From positions 15,190,001-15,254,000 of the forward strand of contig OZ249444.1 of assembly GCA_965235115.1 (NCBI GenBank): DNA of 64,000 nt. Reading direction: 5' to 3'. The stretch's first letter is position 1; each line of letters starts with the position of its first letter. This document shows positions 2,917-63,920 of the stretch, piece by piece. The notes under the pieces were generated by a model. The model saw nothing but the letters and a program-made list of their open reading frames with translations. It was not told where the DNA came from and did no database searches. Source of the stretch: Laetmonice hystrix (lineage: Eukaryota). The translations under genes and the position numbers were made by a program.

Positions 2917-4969
2917 TAATTGGGGAGGAGCTTTCTATTTTAACCAGAAAGTAATACTTGTAGGGAGTACTGTGTATTTGATAAAAGCTGCTGTAAATAC
3001 TCATGCCATCTGGAGGTGTTAAAGGACTAGACCTGACCTGTCACAGTTATGGATAGCAGTCGCTCATTGACAATACACAAAATGTATATTTTTTCATCAT
3101 GACTAAAATGCTCATGTACCTTTTTTTGCCGTTTTCTTTTTGTAATTCATGTATACTGGGCAAGTGATAAATATGGCCTTTCTGACGCAATGTTGGATTA
3201 TATGCAAAAATATCTGTAAAAACCTTGCAAGGGCTCAATCAAGAAGGACAGAGTCATCAACGGCTTTTTTGATGGAGGTGGACTGGAATTAAATGGTTTG
3301 TCTCACGAATACTATAAGGTAATATGTGACGTTTCACCAAAATTTTATCTGCATTGCGATTCTCAGCTATCATCAATAGTTCCCCTACCTTTCCACGTGA
3401 GTTTGATGGCTATAATGTATTATGTACAACATTTAAAAGTGGTCAAGTTGTCTTTCATATGCATGAAAATGACCTACTAAGTCCAACAGACATCAAAATT
3501 TACATGAAATTTAGTGCCAGATCCTGATGATACATGTAATTTGTTGTTGTTTAACTTAAAGGAGCGGTTATTGTACAAGAATATGAACTGTGTGTAAGCC
3601 GTTTTAAAGACCAATTCCCCTAGTGACGTCATCAGGGGCAATGGTAAAGAATAGGCAGGAGTGAGACTGTGATGAGGCGCGAGATTCGAATTTTCAATAT
3701 TTTTCTAAATTGAGAGGACTTCTCAGAAAACCTATCAGGGATACGGCTACAACTCAAAGTGATCTATCTAGATCAGTAAAGTTATCTATGTGATGTCAGT
3801 TGCACTTTAACTGGCCCAGAGAATTGCCGCTGTTACTATGATGTCTTTGTTCCCAGGAGTGTTAATATGCCAGATATGTGGCGTTTATCTTGTCATCTTG
3901 TCATCAATCTGGTAACCGTTCAGTGCCACAGAGTATGTCAATGGTACGAAGGCATAACTCTGAAGATTTCTGTCGATTCCTTTCGTGAGACAAGCCCTTT
4001 AATTCAAATTGGCAGGTGTCGGGATTTATATTATCTTACAATATTTAATCAGATGTATTCATCTGTTGTAAAACAGGGTATCGTGCCTCATTCTCACATC
4101 ATAAAAAATAGATTATTTATGATATATATTTATTCGTACTGTATAAGGCTAAATCATAGTGTTATGTACAAGTGAGGTTATGTTTATAAACCGGTTAGCG
4201 ACCACTATATTTACTCTACATAGCTCGTCTATGATTGAACATACATGTACAACGTCCTGATCAAAACCGGCCAGAGTTGTGATACCATCTCGAACAAAAA
4301 TAAGTTAGTTTGTAATAACCTCTGCTATTGTAGTACCAGACGAGTCAGCTGTCTGGCGGTCAGAATTGGTATACTTATATGCGGGTTATATGAATGGGGA
4401 ACAAGGCAGCCAAAGATGTTACAGTTGACCCAGTTTCACTTTAATAGCCCATACATTGTATGTCGATGTGCAGGCTCTGGGGCCTCTGACACAAACATGT
4501 TGGATTTCAGAATTCGTGAAAGTACAGAGATGCTTTCCTACCACGGAGAATTAAAGACAGAAGACAAGTATGTGTATTGTATGGAATGCGTAATGTTCTT
4601 CGGGTTGCCTTGTTCCATTTTATATTCATATATCAAAGAAAATTTGGTTGAACATCGTTTCTGATAGAATCGATAAGAAAATTGACATAACTATGAATAT
4701 ATAGTATGATCAGATTTGGAGAGGGTAATGTCACAATTTAACGGTTTGTCTCTTTATATAGACATTGCATTGATTGATCTTAGTAACATAACTAAGGGTC
4801 CACCTCACTAAGGATGTACGTAACCTTCAGAGAGGTCACAAAAAGGTTACACAATTCCAGCTACCTAAATATTGGAATCGGTGGGTGGGAGAGGGGATGA
4901 AGGGCCCAGGATATGAGTAAAATGTTTGAGGTGATAATGAGGTTCCATTCCCCTGATATTTGGAGGGGT

Positions 4970-9383: not shown

Positions 9384-10642
9384 TTAGTCGGTTGTAGCCA
9401 GCGCTTTGAGCGCATGACCTGTGACCCTGAAATGATGCCAGTCATCCGTCGTCGTTATATTCACTGCACCCAGTTTCTCATACAGAGATATCGCCTTTTT
9501 GTTCCAGGACAGAGCCTCGAAGTCTAACCGCTTACATTCTTTCTGAACAGCAATCTGAAAGAAAGATAAAAGTTATTCATCTTGAGTTTCATTTATGTTG
9601 TCATTCACGCAGTGTAGTAACTCAAGCGAAAGAAGGGTTCGTTTGGTGTCACCAAGCAAGTTATCTGAACTCCCCTCCCATGAAGTCTTTTCTCCCCCTG
9701 AAAAATCCTACTGCTCCATATTAATTTTCTGGTGGGAAGTGTAGTAGAACGTTGTAACGGTTCTTTGGTGTTCATATGTAAGGACAAGTAACTTTTTTGC
9801 CTTATCCTACCTGGGCGATGTGGCGCCACATTGCCGTTCCAATGCCACGTGACCGGAAGTGGGGTTTGACGTAGAGGTCCTCCATGTATAGTGACCGTCC
9901 CTGGAAGCTGCTGTAAGTGAAGAAGTACAACCCGTAGGCCACCAGCTCTGGTCCTCCTGGACCCTGGACCTCGGCCACCAGGCACTCAAAGTATGGGGTC
10001 TTGCCAAAACCGTCCTTCTTCAGTCCTGAAACAGAATATGACGTGCGAACATATTTTATGATACTGATCATCATTGTGGGGCGCTGTCATCTTATACTTG
10101 ACTTTACATGGGTGCAGAAAACTAAAAGGGATAATGAGCTACCATACCTGATTCAGTAATTGTCACTCTGTCTGACATATCTTCGAATTCAGCCAATTCC
10201 TGGAATTTTAAAGCAAAATGCTGCATACTAAGTTACCCAACTAATGCAGAATCAGGGAATAAGAAAACTAGTTTTATTGTCGCTGCAATCATATTTTATT
10301 TGCACAGGGAGGAGTGCCACAAGCAGAGAATATTCAGTAGTTCTGTAGGCCTAGTTGTTGAAAACTAAAAGGAAAACAACGTCAGCCCATCCATGGCTGT
10401 CCCCCCCCCCGATTGATTTTTTAGATGTTTGGTTTTGTTACCCAACGGCGCGCCATATCTCAAAGCTCTTGGGTGCCTTCATGGTTGGAGGCCAAACGCG
10501 AGTAGGTCTATATCGACCTACTTGTTGGAGGGGCTGTACTAAATGGAACGCTGCACTAACATGAAAAAGTGGTTACCTTGATAAGACCAGCAATGCCACC
10601 ACAGTCTTCCCGTTGTGCAGGCCGGATGATGTATTCTGCCAT
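9384..10642 (-). CDS. SAT1/SAT2: Diamine/thialysine N-acetyltransferase, copy B, 167 aa; exons 10642-10577, 10199-10148, 10025-9811, 9554-9384
   Basis: MAEYIIRPAQREDCGGIAGLIKELAEFEDMSDRVTITESGLKKDGFGKTPYFECLVAEV...FTYSSFQGRSLYMEDLYVKPHFRSRGIG...LDFEALSWNKKAISLYEKLGA...DDWHHFRV; canonical splice sites, no stops. Confidence 0.95.
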
Positions 10643-57204: not shown

Positions 57205-60200
57205 ATGGCGCACACGGTGGTTCAAAATACGTCCGAGCACAAGAAAACTAAAAAGACGAAGAGCAAGACGAAGAAGGAAGGTAAAAAGGGATGCTACATT
57301 TCCTGTTGCATGGGCGTTACCGTGCTGGTTGTTGTGTTGCTTCTGCTCGGCCTTGTGGCCGTGCTGGTCCACGCCCTGGCACCCAAGGGTCTCTGTAACT
57401 GTGAGTCCGACCAACTCTCCGATGACGAGCAGTGGCAGCGATGTGGCAGCATGGCAAACAAACGGAAACAATGTAAGTGAAGGCTAAAATCCGCCATGCA
57501 ATAACCCCTGTGATAAAAAAAATGCGAGTTATGTTATTATTACTTGAAGGTCTGTCTGATTAGATATAACACTGTTAATAACATGAGAACCACATTACCA
57601 CATTACATTAGGAACAGGTGCGTTAAAGATTAAGTGATAGTCACATGTTATTCTACCTGAAAATGTTTCGCCAACGACTCTGTATCAAAGCTTCGCACCT
57701 CCGGTGTTTATGGGACCATTTCAGAACCCTTTAAGGCTAGCTACGTTCCTGGGAACACCACATCAACCTAATTTCAAAACATTTAGGCTAAAACAACATG
57801 CATCCCAGTAAATCATCCGAGCGGTAACACGTCCAAACAAACACAAAATCAGTCAACATTACGACAAAAATAGTGGAAAGGGATTGGGACAACAGCGAGT
57901 TGAGGACTTTCGCATACTGCGCACCAATCAAAACTCACAACTTTTCAAAGAGCCTAAATTCATATACCTTTTCACATTTGGCCACAAACTGAACTTTCTG
58001 CTGAATTCTGCTGCAAACAGTAATGCAGAACACTTCTCACATTTTACAAACATCTTATTGTAAACCCCCGTAACCGTAAAATTCTACAATGAAGAGAAAT
58101 AAATTTTTTTAAATCCCACAAACAGAAGAAAAAGTCCAGCTAGTGCCCACGGCAAGTTAAAACGCGGGAATGCAGCTTCAAACGTATAGTTGTAACTGTC
58201 GACCTCTCCATATAGAAACGTTTAAATCGCTCAGACGGGTTGCCATGATACAAATTTTAGATCAATATTATCGCTGCCTTTATGTATTTTCAAATTTTGT
58301 GACAAAACCTTATGAGCCAAGCTCATGGGCGGCCTAATTCCTCATACCATATATGGAAAGCACAATTGCTGTTTGCATTGAAGTGAAAAAAGGGCGAAGT
58401 CTGGATGTTTTGGCACTGTTTATCGGCCGGCCTCTTGATGTTCAATCTGGTAGGTTTTATAAGGTAAGATTCCAGTGTGCCAGGCCGAGGCCGACAGGCG
58501 TGAAACCTTTGAAACTTTTGTCCTCGACGTTTGCCGAGACACTTGGCGTTGACATTGTGCGGGGGTGGTTCTCAAAAAAGTCATCAAGTATGCAGGACTT
58601 GTGAATGCACGAATCATGATGTGCTACTTGGTGTGGCAAGCCGAATGGGTCAGTTGGGAAAACACCGTTTTGTCTCACGGAAACCATGGTTTCCCTAGGG
58701 AATGTCCTGGAAATAGATTTAGCGATATAGGATTAGTTATACTTAATTCAGGCATATAGTCAGGAATTATTCTGATTTTGTTATCAGGAATATGAATTCA
58801 ATATTGAGTGAATATTGCATGTCTGGGACAATAGACCCGTGTAAGTCTTAGTGTTACATTATATATATAATGCTACTTTTACCAGCGCCAGCGTGTTCTA
58901 GCGAGGCGTATAAAATCTGGAGAATATATAGAAGACTACATATAATAGAACGTAGGTATGTTATTTTTGTGTTTTTTAGTTGATACTTTTCTTTCCACCC
59001 TTTTCATCCGACCAGGCATAGGACCATGTAACGTCACGAAAGGCACTGGCGCAGCTTTGAACTGGTCAGAGTACCGGCTAAACAGGACACTCCTTCCTAC
59101 CCATTACAACCTCGAGTTGCAGCCCCAATTTTACTTACCGAATGATGCTACTTTTACGGGCTTGGTTGAAATCTTCATAAAGTGCGAGAAGTCTACCGAT
59201 GTGATAGTTCTTCACGCCAAGGATCTAAACATCCATTCCGCTGTTCTGAGGTAAATGGAATTTTCTCCTGCCGATCATACGTTGTCACAGGGAGGAAGTC
59301 GACACTATGCCTTTGAAGCCTTCTACAAGGAAGATCCCGAATCAATTACGAATTTTCGCTTCAGATATCCGTGCTGAAAATGTTGTACATTAGAATGATA
59401 GCCACCACAGGGAAAGTAGAAACTTAAAATTGCAATACCTGATTCTGGTGATTGAGATTTATCCCGTTGTAGTTAGAATTATGGTCATTTCTCGCTCGAT
59501 TTCCAAAATATCAAAATGAAACTTTGAGGGAAGCTGTACCTTAAGTTGGCACACTATGTACATCAAGGAATACGTCATGCGACGTCACATCAGTGTGCAA
59601 TGCCATCTTAAAGAAGTCATGTTCAGCAGCTAGCATACCAATTACTTCTTTACGCTGACGGACACAAATAATTACAGATTCAATATTGATTCACTTAGGA
59701 GAACATTTCCCTTTAAAAAACATATTAGGCAGATATTTTTAAATATAGGTCATGGTAAGGAAAACGGTTAAAGCGATAGCCCCATTTTTTTGGGCAAGAA
59801 AGATAACCAAACTGCTTATCATCTTTATTTCTAGGGACAATGACGAACAAGGTCAAACTATCCCTATAGTCCGGTCTGCCAAGGACACAACCAATCAGTT
59901 CTATAAGATGTACCCACGTGACAACCTGGTGGCCGGATACAACTATTACCTGAGGATGAAATTCAATGGGTCCTTGGTGAACACAGGTGCATCAGACCTC
60001 AAGGGCTTCCGCAAAGCTGGCTATTTCTACAACGGCCAGACTAGGTAGGTAAAGAGATCCTACATCGACAGTACGATTATAGATTATTATAATCCCAGCG
60101 ATACGATCACGAGATGGGTCAAGGTCGCAGCTTCTTGCGTGAACATGTTTCCTTTTACCCACACCAAAAGTGTGCAGTCTTGGATTGTGCGGAAACCCGC

Positions 60201-63200
60201 AAAGCCTCTCTCTCCCCACATATTCCCATACCATTCCCGGTATTTCACAAAACAAACATGCCCATCTGCTCCCAGGCCTTTACCAAACTACATCCTTATC
60301 TACCTATCCAGGGTGTAATAAGAATAAAACCCAGATGTCATGGGGGAAATACAACTACAGATGGCGTTAGTTGTAACTGCGGTACGGTTGCCCATTGATG
60401 GCTCCTATGACAATTAAGTCAAACGTCATAAAAAAGATAGAAAGAAATGGTCGCTCTAACCCCACAGGCTTTAAACAGATGTATATATCCCAATGACGCG
60501 AGCGATGTTGCGATACGTTTGGTGCGATATTCTTGTTTTTTTTTTATTTTTCGCCTTTGCTTAATTTGGCATACTTTAGGGTAAGCCTCAGTTCCGTCTG
60601 CCGGTAACCGTTCCCAACCGTGTATAATGTCATCTCGGGTCTTGTTTGAAAGTGGACATCTTGGCCTGACATATGCTATATCTCCCTTAGTAAAGGATTA
60701 AATATTTAATAATTGGATACACCATGTATAGCCCTCTTTATGACCTCGGTCCCAACAGGTATCTAGTCTTCTCCCAGTTTGGTCGAGCTGATGCCCGCCG
60801 GGCGTTCCCCTGTTTCGACGAGCCGTTCTTCAAGGCAACCTTCAACGTGACTTTGGTCCGGCAAACGGGGCACACAGCACTCAGCAATATGCCTCTACTG
60901 ACTACCACTCTGAGGTGAGCTTTCTTTTTCTATGTCTTCTTGTTCTTTGGGGGATCGGGGATAAGAATGGCCCTCATTGGCTGTTCGAAAGAGGCAATGA
61001 AAGGGGCGAGGGCTGGGATGGGAAGCTTAATTGAGCTTTGGAGTGACGTACGGCTATGGGTTTGCAGCAGTACCATCTTTCTAACCGGTACTTTAAAGGG
61101 CTCGGCAACTGGGGGTTCAATGGCTCTGGTAACATACATATCACGGAAGAATTCCCTTCACAATAACACCCTAGATCTCCTCCAAATATGAGAATATCAG
61201 CAGCCGCCCTACATAACCGTTTCTTTGCAGGAATTCAAACTGGGAGGCGGACCGCTTCCGGGAGACGCCGCGAATGCCCACTTACGGCGTTGCTTTTGTC
61301 ATATCACAGTACAAACATGTTACATCCACAACACCAACCGGAACAACAGTAAGTGCAAGCCTTTACTCTCTTACTTCTGTTTCAAAGTATAGATAGTAAG
61401 GTGGCCCGTCGAGCACCTCTGATCTGTGATTTGATCCGTCACAATCCTGTCGCAGATCCGTGTCTGGACTCAGCCCAATTACATCAATTACACAAGGTTT
61501 GCCCTGTCCGTTAGCGGTCCGCTGTTGGAAACGTACGAGAAGTGGACAGGCATACCCTACCCGCTGCCCAAGATAGGTTAGTATCAACGAACCCTTGGGA
61601 AAGGCAAATCCAGGGCGAAAGGGGCATTGCCTTCCCCCTAAATTGGCATTTTGATTTTTTGATTTTGATCTTTTCGGAAATGCCTAGATTCTATACCTCA
61701 ACACGACTCAAAATATCGTCACATAATGTGCCGCGGATACTTGGATTTTAGCCCTTCCTAATATTCCTCCAAGTGATATCCTGAATCCGCAGTGAAAATT
61801 CACTTACAAAAATGAAACTGGGTTACCTTGCCCAAATTAACGGCCCATTCTGACACTGTACCTCAGACCAAGTGGTGGTCCCGTCTCTGCGGGGTTCTCT
61901 GGCTGGCTGGGGTCTTATCATCTACCCGGACGGGGAGTTCCTCTACAACCCTAAGTACACCACCACCAGGGACAAACGCCGGGCTGCAGACGCCATCGCC
62001 CAGAAACTGGCCCAGCAGGTGGGTACCTTCCCTCAGAGCAATGCTTGTCTTCAAGAGTAAGCGTACTGCGACGACTTCTTTGTTCTATCCGTCTCTCATT
62101 GGTTCGATAAGAGGACTCACAACATTTGCTGGTTTTGACGTGGCATTTTAAGACGTTTGTTAATACCCCCATCGCACTAGAAGGTGATCAAGCTGCGCTC
62201 TAGTAAATGGGCCAGATCGCCGTAGAGCGCGGATAGAGTGCCCCGAGGTCCTTCTGGGCGTCGTAGGAGCGAGATAGTGTCTCCCTGGGTCGTCATATGG
62301 TCACCATGAGCGCCATGAGCTTCCTGAGAGCGCAGGTCGAGCGGGGTGGGAGCGGCATTGCAATCACACTTGGAGGGGTTTTCCGATGTTGACGGCGACC
62401 AACGGCGATCTGCTAGGTCGCCATTGGTCGCCGTTAGGTCTTCATCCAGTGTGATTGGGGCATTACTGCTGAGCGGTGCAGGAACCTTCCGGGGTGTTTT
62501 AATTTTTTAAGGCGTAGTTTTCCTGTTTTTGGCTGCAGTAGTTTTGGACTGTTTTGACGTGATGTTTTAAGACGTAGCTTTCTTGCTGTTGGTAGAGTAG
62601 ATTTACCGTGACTTTTAAAATCCTAGACTTTGTCCTATTTTTGGCAGTGGTTTGGTAATCTGGTAACGCCAGAATGGTGGGATGACACATTCCTCGTCGT
62701 ATCGTTTGCTTTCTACATCGGCGACAACATCGGCCTTCAGAATGTCCTTGGCCACTGGGAAATTGTGAGTTCTCGACTCTTGTTTTAATTAGCCAAGGCT
62801 TACCGCATTTTAATACAGAATTCTCATACCACAGGAGCTAATTCATAAAGTCTTTTCATAAACTCATGGATGACACAGCCTTTTTTACTGTTTGTTGTAG
62901 GACAAATTCTTTGTCCGTGAGATGGAGGAATCCATGGAGAACCGTTATGGAATCCGTCCGGTTCGTTCAGCGAATGTCAACCCTAATCTTGACGATCCTT
63001 ACTTCGTTGAAGGCAGGAAGACATATTTGAAGGTCAGATGAAGGACACATTATCCATAGCCCCTGTATAATTATATTGGCACGAACTATGAATGGTTTGA
63101 TACGATCAGTTCATGCAGATAAGCTACCGTGATTTTATGGGGAATGGTAGGTCATGAAAGGGAAGTTATTCCAAAGACAATCCAAAGCACAACCTGATTG

Positions 63201-63920
63201 GATTTGCTTGATCTGTTTCTAGGGTGCAGGGATCCTAAGAACCATCTCCTTCTTCTTGACGCCTGCGGCTTTCAAGAGAGCTATCCAGGTTAGAGACAGT
63301 TGAATGCCTTCATTTCTCCCCAAGCATATATTATACGATTAACAAAAAAAAAGTTCGGATGGTCATCTTTATTGTCACATCCCCACTGAAATTTAGGAGA
63401 TGTGACGTTTATAGTGCATGCATTGCATTTTTACATATTTCTCTACTTGTTAGTTTGTACTGTATGAATTTATAATTGTTTTTAAAAATTTACCCTGTAG
63501 AACTACTTGAAGAGGGCAGCTTACCTGACCGTCACCAGTACGGACCTTTACGAATCTTTTGACAGGGTGAGTCTCAAAGAGAAAGGTTTGCATATAACGC
63601 AGGATTAACATCAATGTTCTCAATAATATTGCTGTCATTTACAATATGTATTTACAATACCTTGTGGAGAAGTAAACGTGACATTGACAGCTCTCTATAT
63701 TGTCGCTTGTGCAGGCCGCTCAGTTTGATCGCAAGGTATCGTGGGACACTTACATCACAGACCTACCGTCAATCCTGGGCACGTGGTTCGACAGCGACAA
63801 CTTCCCCCTGGTCAACGTCTCTAAACGAGTCAATGGCAGCATCTCCTTCCGGGTCAGGCAGACGCCCATGATACAAACTACTAAGGTCAACGAATCAACA
63901 ACGGAGATCACGAGGACAAG
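57205..63920 (+). CDS. Type-II membrane M1 aminopeptidase N-like protein, predicted catalytically inactive; first 12 exons 57205-57472, 59016-59250, 59835-60044, 60759-60914, 61231-61348, 61456-61576, 61867-62018, 62648-62764, 62901-63032, 63223-63288, 63501-63566, 63715-63920; continues beyond the window
   Basis: Lys-rich tail, TM, Cys-rich stalk, YRLNRTLLPTHYNLELQP, ADARRAFPCFDEP, ALSNMP, FRETPRMPTY, IPYPLPKID, WGLIIY, QWFGNLVTPEWWDD, TYLKGAGILR. Motifs read GSLAG (for GAMEN) and QKLAQ-18x-V (for HEXXH-18x-E). Confidence 0.93.
62161..62465. mobile_element. GC-rich MITE, PIF/Harbinger-like termini, in intron 7 of the M1 homologue
   Basis: TAATACCCCCATCGCACTAG vs reverse complement of the right end TAATGCCCCAATCACACTGG (16/20). 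Confidence 0.6.

What the first reader, a model, noticed from the sequence alone, without database searches (positions are those of the whole stretch)
57205..63920. M1 aminopeptidase pseudoenzyme: every catalytic residue replaced, reading frame intact
Seen: 12 exons splice in frame with no stops, and the scaffold motifs are well kept (PCFDEP, YPLPK, WGL, QWFGNLVT). The exon at 61867-62018 reads R-GSLAG-WGL where M1 enzymes have GAMEN-WGL, and A-QKLAQ-QW where they have A-HELAH-QW. The third zinc ligand 18 residues later is Val (FLVVSF for WLNEGF), and the amine-anchoring Gln/Glu before ADARR is Gly. The oxyanion Tyr (TYLKGA) is retained. Established: the two His plus the distal Glu bind zinc and the HEXXH Glu is the general base. 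Inference: this is a maintained non-catalytic cell-surface protein (peptide-binding decoy, receptor or adhesion role) rather than a pseudogene. The Glu-to-Lys swap reverses the pocket charge and might bind an acidic ligand.
Basis: partly seen in the sequence, partly recalled or inferred. Interest (0 to 1): 0.75.

Follow-up and report, generated by a model that had tools for sequence, protein, structure and literature searches.

The report
Intact but catalytically dead aminopeptidase gene
A (probably annelid) worm gene for a membrane-anchored relative of the gut enzyme aminopeptidase N has lost every residue needed for catalysis yet has been kept intact by selection; it is the first of five tandem sister genes, two of them normal enzymes, so it is a real pseudoenzyme of an already known general kind whose binding job is still unknown.

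Summary
Exon 7 (61867-62018) reads GSLAG and QKLAQ where M1 enzymes have GAMEN and HEXXH. The third zinc ligand is Val438, the amine-anchoring Glu/Gln is Gly246, and the transition-state Tyr501 is kept.

It runs 4.3 kb past the window end and encodes 1004 aa, with GT-AG at every intron and one terminal stop.

It is not a decaying pseudogene:
- Outside the catalytic core it keeps 40 of 43 near-invariant family positions, against 24 of 36 inside (p=0.004).
- Its N- and C-terminal domains are as similar to the live paralogues as those are to each other.
- Neutral drift sufficient to erase the catalytic residues would give about 17 stops.
- 6 of 8 listed exonic polymorphisms are synonymous (p about 0.005).
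- No alternative HEXXH exon exists.

The gene heads a five-gene tandem array (A-E). B and E are canonical enzymes, C lacks only the general base (HVIAH), and D is a second fully dead copy sharing five exclusive derived core residues with A.

No RNA data and no orthologues were reachable. The spliced protein could not be folded or searched whole. Function is inferred: a non-catalytic surface binding or partner subunit. This is a new member of a known kind (M1 non-peptidase homologues).

The parts
57205..57472 (+). Exon 1: start codon, Lys-rich cytoplasmic tail, KKGCYISCC motif, signal-anchor helix (residues about 37-55), Cys-containing stalk
   Evidence: Gene model. Best 19-residue hydropathy 3.18 at residue 37. 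The N-terminal motif is shared with all four paralogues and with annelid and mollusc APN-like proteins.
59016..59250 (+). Exon 2: start of the M1 N-terminal beta domain
   Evidence: PF17900, 36.8 bits. Junctions.
59835..60044 (+). Exon 3: N-terminal domain
   Evidence: Junctions. Homologous exon in paralogues B-E.
60759..60914 (+). Exon 4: N-terminal domain with PCFDEP. Gly246 (60781-60783) replaces the substrate-amine anchoring Glu/Gln.
   Evidence: PF17900, 61.7 bits. Alignment to porcine APN. Coordinates checked.
61231..61348 (+). Exon 5
   Evidence: Junctions. Paralogue homology.
61456..61576 (+). Exon 6: start of the catalytic-domain homologue (YPLPK)
61867..62018 (+). Exon 7: dead catalytic exon. 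GSLAG (61893-61907) stands for GAMEN, YPD (61923-61931) for YRE, and QKLAQ (62001-62015) for HEXXH.
   Evidence: It is the only exon-7-like sequence in the locus.
62648..62764 (+). Exon 8: WFGNLVT..WWDD scaffold. Val437-Val438 (62696-62701) stand for Asn-Glu, where the Glu is the third zinc ligand.
   Evidence: PF01433, 28.1 bits. Alignment to ERAP2. Coordinates.
62901..63032 (+). Exon 9: strongly diverged pocket-lining segment ending in TYLK. Tyr501 (63024-63026) is retained.
   Evidence: No PDB or Pfam match on its own. Homologous exon found in B, C and E. Coordinates.
63223..63288 (+). Exon 10
63501..63566 (+). Exon 11
63715..63920 (+). Exon 12: last exon inside the window. The gene continues with exons 13-22 at L001:161-255, 466-593, 778-833, 1795-1945, 2096-2175, 2382-2492, 2792-2977, 3278-3400, 3656-3728 and 4103-4267 (stop codon).
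   Evidence: Exon 19 gives ERAP1_C (PF11838), 30.7 bits.

Best explanation
This is an intact gene for a catalytically dead member of peptidase family M1, of the aminopeptidase N type, and selection maintains it. The protein is 1004 aa and type II membrane-anchored and carries N-glycosylation sequons. It keeps the four-domain M1 scaffold but cannot bind the catalytic zinc (His, His, Glu are now Gln415, Gln419, Val438). It has no general base (Glu is now Lys416) and no exopeptidase N-terminus clamp (GAMEN is now GSLAG; the anchoring Glu/Gln is now Gly246).

It arose by ancient tandem duplication in a five-gene array. The array also holds two canonical enzymes (B, E), a copy lacking only the general base (C) and a second fully dead copy (D).

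Shown by sequence:
- the residue replacements;
- the intact 22-exon ORF;
- purifying selection outside the catalytic core;
- the array.

Inferred: it acts by binding, not by hydrolysis. My preferred mechanism (about 0.35) is that it is a non-catalytic partner subunit pairing with the live paralogues through the C-terminal dimerising domain, which is as conserved between A and B as between the two enzymes. The next option (about 0.3) is an independent surface receptor or decoy that uses surfaces other than the old S1 pocket, as ADAM22/23 do.
For: Replacements:
-.

Gene integrity:
- Full ORF of 22 exons with all 21 introns GT-AG.
- Intron positions and phases are identical in all five paralogues.

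Selection:
- Of positions at least 95% conserved in 106 active animal homologues and kept in B and E, A keeps 40/43 outside the catalytic core and 24/36 inside. Fisher p=0.004.
- A-B/E identity is 48-55% in the N domain (B-E 58.6%) and 44-49% in the C-terminal half (B-E 45.8%).
- Four-fold sites are 61-74% different, i.e. saturated, while dN is only 0.53-0.59, so dN/dS is about 0.2 or less.
- A's terminal branch is 0.97, against 0.56-0.69 for B, C and E.
- Neutral drift that changes 33% of residues gives about 17 stops, and none of 2000 simulated sequences was stop-free. The chance of all 84 splice bases surviving is below 1e-4.
- 6 synonymous against 2 non-synonymous among 8 listed exonic variants, p=0.003-0.009. 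All 8 indels are intronic.

Other:
- No other exon-7/8-like sequence and no HExxH in any frame of the locus.
- One strong signal anchor, 11 sequons and 14 Cys, as in B.
- A and D share five exclusive identical derived residues, all in the core, against 0-3 for the other pairs.
Against: - No transcript evidence: no RNA run exists for this organism.
- No orthologue from another species could be examined. Selection is therefore inferred from paralogues with saturated dS and from a handful of polymorphisms in one sample, of which the tool showed only 40 of 56.
- Loss of activity is inferred from sequence only.
- The gene model is computational. The exon 13/14 junction has a weak splice score; the exon 17/18 acceptor was not the top-scoring one and was chosen by paralogue conservation.
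- The partner-subunit mechanism has no direct support. The spliced protein could not be folded or docked.
Confidence: 0.8

Rival explanations
1. It is a recently inactivated, unprocessed pseudogene that has not yet had time to accumulate stops.
For: No RNA evidence of expression. The catalytic exon falls below the Pfam threshold (18.6 against 27.7 bits). A has the second-longest terminal branch in the array.
Against: - Every one of about ten catalytic or substrate-anchoring residues is replaced, which needs long relaxed evolution at those sites. Meanwhile 40/43 other near-invariant positions, all 42 splice sites and 1004 codons are intact.
- Simulation gives P(no stop) of 0.35% already at 0.05 substitutions per site, and 0 of 2000 at 0.1 or more.
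- Exonic variants are mostly synonymous and the indels are confined to introns.
Confidence: 0.05
2. It is still an enzyme, using a non-canonical metal site or mechanism or a different substrate chemistry, with Gln415/Gln419 and other residues replacing the canonical triad.
For: The transition-state Tyr501 and neighbouring Lys503 are retained, and the overall pocket scaffold is kept.
Against: - Established M1 enzymology requires His-His-Glu zinc ligation and the HEXXH Glu as general base. Here these are Gln, Gln, Val and Lys.
- The GAMEN Glu and Asn and the QFE-type anchor are also gone.
- Exon 9, which lines the pocket, has diverged beyond recognition.
Confidence: 0.04
3. The dead motifs are an artefact: an assembly error, or a mis-chosen exon with a canonical alternative exon 7 supplying GAMEN/HEXXH.
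For: None found.
Against: - Independent contigs from three runs of one sample, possibly the sample the assembly came from, span exons 4-7 in one piece. Within exon 7 they differ at only two synonymous sites.
- A local search of 55000-69500 on both strands finds a single exon-7-like and a single exon-8-like sequence and no HExxH in any frame.
- A genome-wide search finds no second copy of this exon.
Confidence: 0.01

Closest known systems
Aminopeptidase N / CD13 (ANPEP) and invertebrate APN-like ectoenzymes (MEROPS family M1)
   Same: - Type II signal anchor, followed by the M1 N domain, thermolysin-like domain and ERAP1_C domain.
- End-to-end alignment at 29-33% identity with annelid, mollusc, amphioxus and echinoderm APN-like proteins.
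- Falls inside the bilaterian APN-like clade and not the glutamyl-aminopeptidase clade.
- Scaffold motifs PCFDEP, WGL and WFGNLVT are kept.
   Different: - All zinc ligands, the general base, the GAMEN Glu/Asn and the amine anchor are replaced.
- The five-gene array sits on its own long stem (1.31 substitutions per site) with no close relative among the proteins retrieved.
TAF2 (TFIID subunit with an M1-like domain)
   Same: An M1 fold retained for a non-catalytic, protein-binding role. It lacks the GxMxN exopeptidase motif (PMC6672047).
   Different: TAF2 is nuclear, ancient (pre-LECA) and often still has HExxHx18E. The gene here is a membrane ectodomain protein, lineage-specific, and has lost the zinc site as well.
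Tma108 (yeast M1 homologue, nascent-chain binder)
   Same: The only M1 member listed in a 2024 review of pseudo-metallopeptidases. It is proposed to act non-enzymatically (PMC11266112).
   Different: Tma108 keeps all active-site residues but one and uses its N-terminus-binding pocket. The gene here has lost that pocket's anchoring residues.
Aphid salivary aminopeptidase-N expansion
   Same: A lineage-specific APN gene-family expansion in an invertebrate in which a few members lack HEXXH (PMC6012102).
   Different: Those are secreted salivary proteins under episodic positive selection, with no analysis of the dead members. Here there is a membrane-anchored five-gene tandem array with graded loss: E and B intact, C without the general base, A and D fully dead.
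ADAM22/ADAM23 (functional analogy only; family M12, not related)
   Same: Cell-surface metalloprotease homologues in which HExxH has become QSLAH/QSLAQ. They work as receptors through other surfaces (PMC11266112). Compare QKLAQ here.
   Different: Different fold and family. No ligand is known for the gene here.

Membership tests
Peptidase family M1 (homology / fold) | M1 N-terminal beta domain (PF17900) | tested here: met
   Exon 4 scores 61.7 bits and exon 2 scores 36.8 bits, against a cut-off of 25.8.
Peptidase family M1 (homology / fold) | Thermolysin-like catalytic-domain homology (PF01433) | tested here: met
   Exon 8 scores 28.1 bits against a cut-off of 27.7. Exon 7 alone scores only 18.6 bits because its motifs are replaced. 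PDB alignments to ENPEP, APN and ERAP2.
Peptidase family M1 (homology / fold) | ERAP1-like C-terminal helical domain (PF11838) | tested here: inconclusive
   A single exon (19) gives 30.7 bits against a cut-off of 38.2. The whole spliced protein could not be scanned. Local BLASTP does align residues 8-994 with full-length APN-like proteins.
Active M1 aminopeptidase (enzyme) | HEXXH-X18-E zinc-binding and general-base motif | tested here: not met
   QKLAQ-X18-V. These columns are invariant in 106 active homologues.
Active M1 aminopeptidase (enzyme) | GXMEN exopeptidase motif | tested here: not met
   GSLAG, with a one-residue deletion before it.
Active M1 aminopeptidase (enzyme) | N-terminal-amine anchoring Glu/Gln before (A/T)DAR | tested here: not met
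   Gly246.
Active M1 aminopeptidase (enzyme) | Transition-state-stabilising Tyr | tested here: met
   Tyr501 is retained in an invariant column.
APN/CD13-type type II ectoprotein | Single N-terminal signal anchor with a short cytoplasmic tail | tested here: met
   Hydropathy 3.18 over residues 37-55, and no other comparable segment. The same holds in paralogues B-E. Topology itself is not testable here.
APN/CD13-type type II ectoprotein | Phylogenetic placement with APN-like rather than glutamyl-aminopeptidase-like proteins | tested here: met
   Inside the 99/99-supported APN-like group; the ENPEP-like group is outside.
Unprocessed pseudogene | Stops, frameshifts or lost splice sites | tested here: not met
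   None in 22 exons or 42 splice sites.
Unprocessed pseudogene | Neutral pattern of change (uniform loss of conserved sites, N/S near expectation) | tested here: not met
   Losses are concentrated in the catalytic core, p=0.004. Polymorphism is 2 non-synonymous to 6 synonymous, against 74% non-synonymous expected, p about 0.005.

The most novel reading that the evidence does not exclude
A and D descend from one ancient, already-dead ancestor. They share five exclusive derived core residues, and both lines have since kept intact ORFs past synonymous saturation. They would then form a worm-specific family of aminopeptidase-N-derived surface proteins working with the live enzymes B and E of the same array, as regulatory or targeting subunits or as receptors or decoys for gut ligands. 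Copy C (zinc site kept, general base lost) would be a substrate-trapping intermediate. The array would be a natural series showing how an ectopeptidase turns into a receptor.
Probability: 0.25. Interest if true: 0.55.

Novelty: new member of a known kind. Interest (0 to 1): 0.35.

Why it matters
Pseudoenzymes are well documented among metalloproteases, mainly in the ADAM and carboxypeptidase families. For family M1, the 2024 review I read lists only yeast Tma108 (PMC11266112), although HEXXH-less APN copies have been noted in aphids (PMC6012102).

This locus offers a clean case. One tandem array holds two canonical enzymes, one copy missing only the general base, and two fully dead copies. All five have intact 22-exon frames and identical intron positions. 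That makes the route from ectopeptidase to non-catalytic surface protein experimentally approachable in one animal.

It also warns annotators that 'aminopeptidase N-like' genes in invertebrate genomes need not be peptidases. It does not open a new category of biology.

Tried and rejected
- RNA evidence: the look-up of sequencing runs found only three DNA-type contig sets of one sample and no RNA.
- Orthologues:
  - phmmer of exon 7 against 1.84 billion representatives gave no A-like sequence. The best M1 hits were ordinary active exons at 34-49% identity.
  - The word-index search with the 68-aa exon-7 open frame found no candidate.
- A full-length search with A was impossible, because a spliced protein has no reference.
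- I tried to build a scaffold alignment (sea-urchin APN plus A's exons) as a profile query. MAFFT scattered the fragments, so alignment A1 was discarded.
- The search with the sea-urchin protein gave a useful panel of 119 active homologues but nothing closer than 33% to A.
- The third homologue search was left unused. Any available query is an active enzyme, and only the best 120 hits are listed, so dead relatives could not surface.
- Pairwise dN/dS: synonymous sites are saturated. NG86 dS was 2.2-4.9 or undefined and YN00 failed, so only an upper bound on dN/dS can be given.
- Order of the five paralogues is unresolved: A+C+D 52/54, C+D 87/74, A+D not rejected at p-AU 0.37. Single or repeated loss of activity therefore cannot be decided.
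- Rfam on the window found nothing.
- The contig behind P0004 is another organism's E-like gene and is not informative for A.
Full report
What is there. The window is G000:C10:15190001-15254000 of a 627-Mb eukaryotic genome. Exon 8 aligns to ERAP2 with Val-Val-Ser under Lys-Glu-Gly, so the third zinc ligand is Val438. Exon 4 aligns to porcine APN with Gln-Phe-Gly under Gln-Met-Gln, so the amine-anchoring position is Gly246. Tyr501 is retained. All motif coordinates were re-translated. One residue is deleted just before GSLAG, and the conserved YRE is YPD.

Gene model. Open-frame blocks were located by six-frame translation and by tblastx against the downstream paralogues. Each junction was then chosen as the best frame-compatible GT..AG pair, except exon 17/18. 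The result is 22 exons, a 3015-nt CDS and 1004 aa with a single terminal stop. Exons 13-22 lie in the next 4.3 kb (L001:161-4267). The weakest calls are the exon 13/14 junction (low score) and the exon 17/18 acceptor (a lower-scoring site was chosen). The chosen positions are the ones conserved in all four paralogues. Pfam supports the N domain, the catalytic-domain homologue and, more weakly, the ERAP1_C domain on single exons. The protein has one strong N-terminal hydrophobic segment (a type II signal anchor), 11 N-glycosylation sequons and 14 Cys.

Not a pseudogene. Five lines argue against decay.
1. All 1004 codons and all 42 splice sites are intact.
2. I aligned A-E with 106 active animal APN/ENPEP-like proteins and took columns that are at least 95% conserved and also kept in the live paralogues B and E. 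A keeps 40 of 43 outside the catalytic core but only 24 of 36 inside it (Fisher p=0.004). In the N domain A is 48-55% identical to B/E (B-E 58.6%). In the C-terminal half it is 44-49% identical (B-E 45.8%). Outside the core, A therefore evolves like the enzymes.
3. Four-fold degenerate sites between paralogues are 61-74% different, which is saturated, while dN is 0.45-0.62. dN/dS is thus at most about 0.2. A's terminal branch (0.97) is about 1.4 to 1.7 times those of B, C and E (0.56-0.69).
4. In a neutral simulation, drift sufficient to change a third of residues, as seen at the catalytic-core columns, produces about 17 stops. None of 2000 replicates stayed open at 0.1 substitutions per site or more, only 0.35% did at 0.05, and the 84 splice bases would almost never all survive.
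5. Contigs of three DNA runs of one sample cover the locus. Of the 40 listed differences, 8 are exonic: 6 synonymous and 2 non-synonymous (D169G, R474H). About 74% non-synonymous would be expected (p=0.003-0.009). All 8 indels are intronic. The tool listed only 40 of 56 differences, and the sample may be the assembled individual, so this line is supportive and not decisive.

No rescue exon. A local search of 55000-69500 on both strands with the canonical exon 7 and 8 peptides of B and E finds only the modelled exons. There is no HExxH in any frame. Genome-wide, exon 7 has no second copy.

Context: a five-gene tandem array. Downstream on the same strand lie four paralogues, at big 70307-90344 (B), 94222-108668 (C), 118654-130275 (D) and 131338-147492 (E), where big is the window coordinate continued past 64000. 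Each has 22 exons, the same intron phases, GT-AG junctions and a complete ORF of 1026-1089 aa.
- E is fully canonical (QFE, GAMEN, HELAH, NEG, Tyr).
- B is nearly so (QFQ, GSGMEN, HELAH, NEA).
- C keeps the zinc ligands but has Val for the general base (HVIAH) and SALEN for GAMEN.
- D is a second dead copy (QSLGGG, EQLAK, Tyr replaced by Ser).

Pairwise identities are 38-47%. In an ML tree the five form a 100/100 clade on a long stem inside the bilaterian APN-like group. The internal order is unresolved. A and D share five exclusive identical derived residues at conserved columns, all in the core: GAMEN Ala to Ser and Asn to Gly, YRE Arg to Pro, NEG Gly to Ser, and SHP Ser to Ile. Other pairs share 0-3. 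This suggests, but does not prove, a common dead ancestor.

Lineage and relatives. The best full-length match is an Owenia (annelid) protein at 31% identity. The N-terminal KKGC(Y/F)(I/V)S motif is shared with annelid and mollusc APN-like proteins. Other agents' notes on this genome call it an annelid or polychaete, which is a lead consistent with my hits. A Logan contig from another organism carries exons 5-7 of an E-like member at 53-62% identity. No A-like sequence exists among 1.84 billion representatives.

How it probably works (inference). Without zinc ligands, a general base or the three amine-anchoring residues, hydrolysis and canonical N-terminus capture are excluded on established M1 enzymology. 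Selection acts on the fold, the membrane anchor and especially the C-terminal domain, which is the dimerisation domain in mammalian APN (my own knowledge). I therefore favour a non-catalytic binding role. The options are a partner subunit of the live paralogues (about 0.35) or an independent receptor or decoy using other surfaces (about 0.3), with the rest unknown.

Comparison and novelty. M1 non-catalytic homologues are known:
- TAF2 lacks GxMxN (PMC6672047).
- Tma108 is a nascent-chain binder (PMC11266112).
- A few aphid APN copies lack HEXXH (PMC6012102).
- ADAM22/23, with QSLAH/QSLAQ in place of HExxH, are a functional analogy (PMC11266112).

I found no paper on annelid APN pseudoenzymes. 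The finding is a sound new member of a known kind. Its added value is the graded array.

Limits. The gene models are computational.

Noticed in passing
L007:3654-10000 and L008:1-5275 (catalytic exon L007:9817-9975): Paralogue D is a second fully dead copy with an intact 22-exon ORF of 1026 aa. It has QSLGGG for GAMEN, EQLAK for HEXXH, QLT for QFE, and the transition-state Tyr replaced by Ser, while the third ligand Glu is kept (LSESF). It shares five exclusive derived core residues with A.
   Followed up: partly
L012:222 to L006:3669 (catalytic exon L003:4083-4238): Paralogue C (1049 aa, intact) keeps both His and the distal Glu but has HVIAH: the general-base Glu is Val. GAMEN is SALEN. It may be a zinc-binding but non-hydrolysing intermediate state.
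   Followed up: partly
L001:6307 to L005:6344 (B; catalytic exon L002:8085-8240) and L008:6338 to L009:4493 (E; catalytic exon L004:4464-4616): Paralogues B (1053 aa) and E (1089 aa) have canonical catalytic motifs. Both carry C-terminal extensions of about 50-70 residues beyond the point where A and D end. B's intron 5 is 6.6 kb and begins with a GGA/GAG-rich low-complexity tract (L002:990-1229).
   Followed up: partly
L006:8321-9423, 10003-10317 and 10314-10517 (the last two extend into L007; = G000:C10:15305002-15305517): A partial duplicate of the 3' end of paralogue C, including its last exon, lies about 5.5 kb downstream of C. Three blastn pieces match at 86-98.5% identity, the longest (1.1 kb) at 95.7%. 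It is a gene fragment left by a recent segmental duplication.
   Followed up: no
window:62111-62617: Intron 7 of the gene holds a high-copy repeat. Contig word depth rises from about 60 to 15,000-38,000, with many loose ends, so it is presumably a transposable-element fragment.
   Followed up: no
L010:213-1374 and L011:170-1331: Logan contigs from runs ERR14368249 and ERR14368245 (another organism) carry exons 5-7 of an active member of this same long-stem APN subfamily. They are 53-62% identical to E and have the same exon layout. The subfamily is therefore not confined to this genome.
   Followed up: partly
G000:C10:13210036-13236750, 17447967-17455477, 22192968-22197442; C2, C29, C1, C6, C13: At least a dozen further M1-family loci exist in this genome. 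They include a near-identical duplicated pair on C29 (8509119-8510536 and 8520902-8522319). None is close to the A-E array.
   Followed up: no
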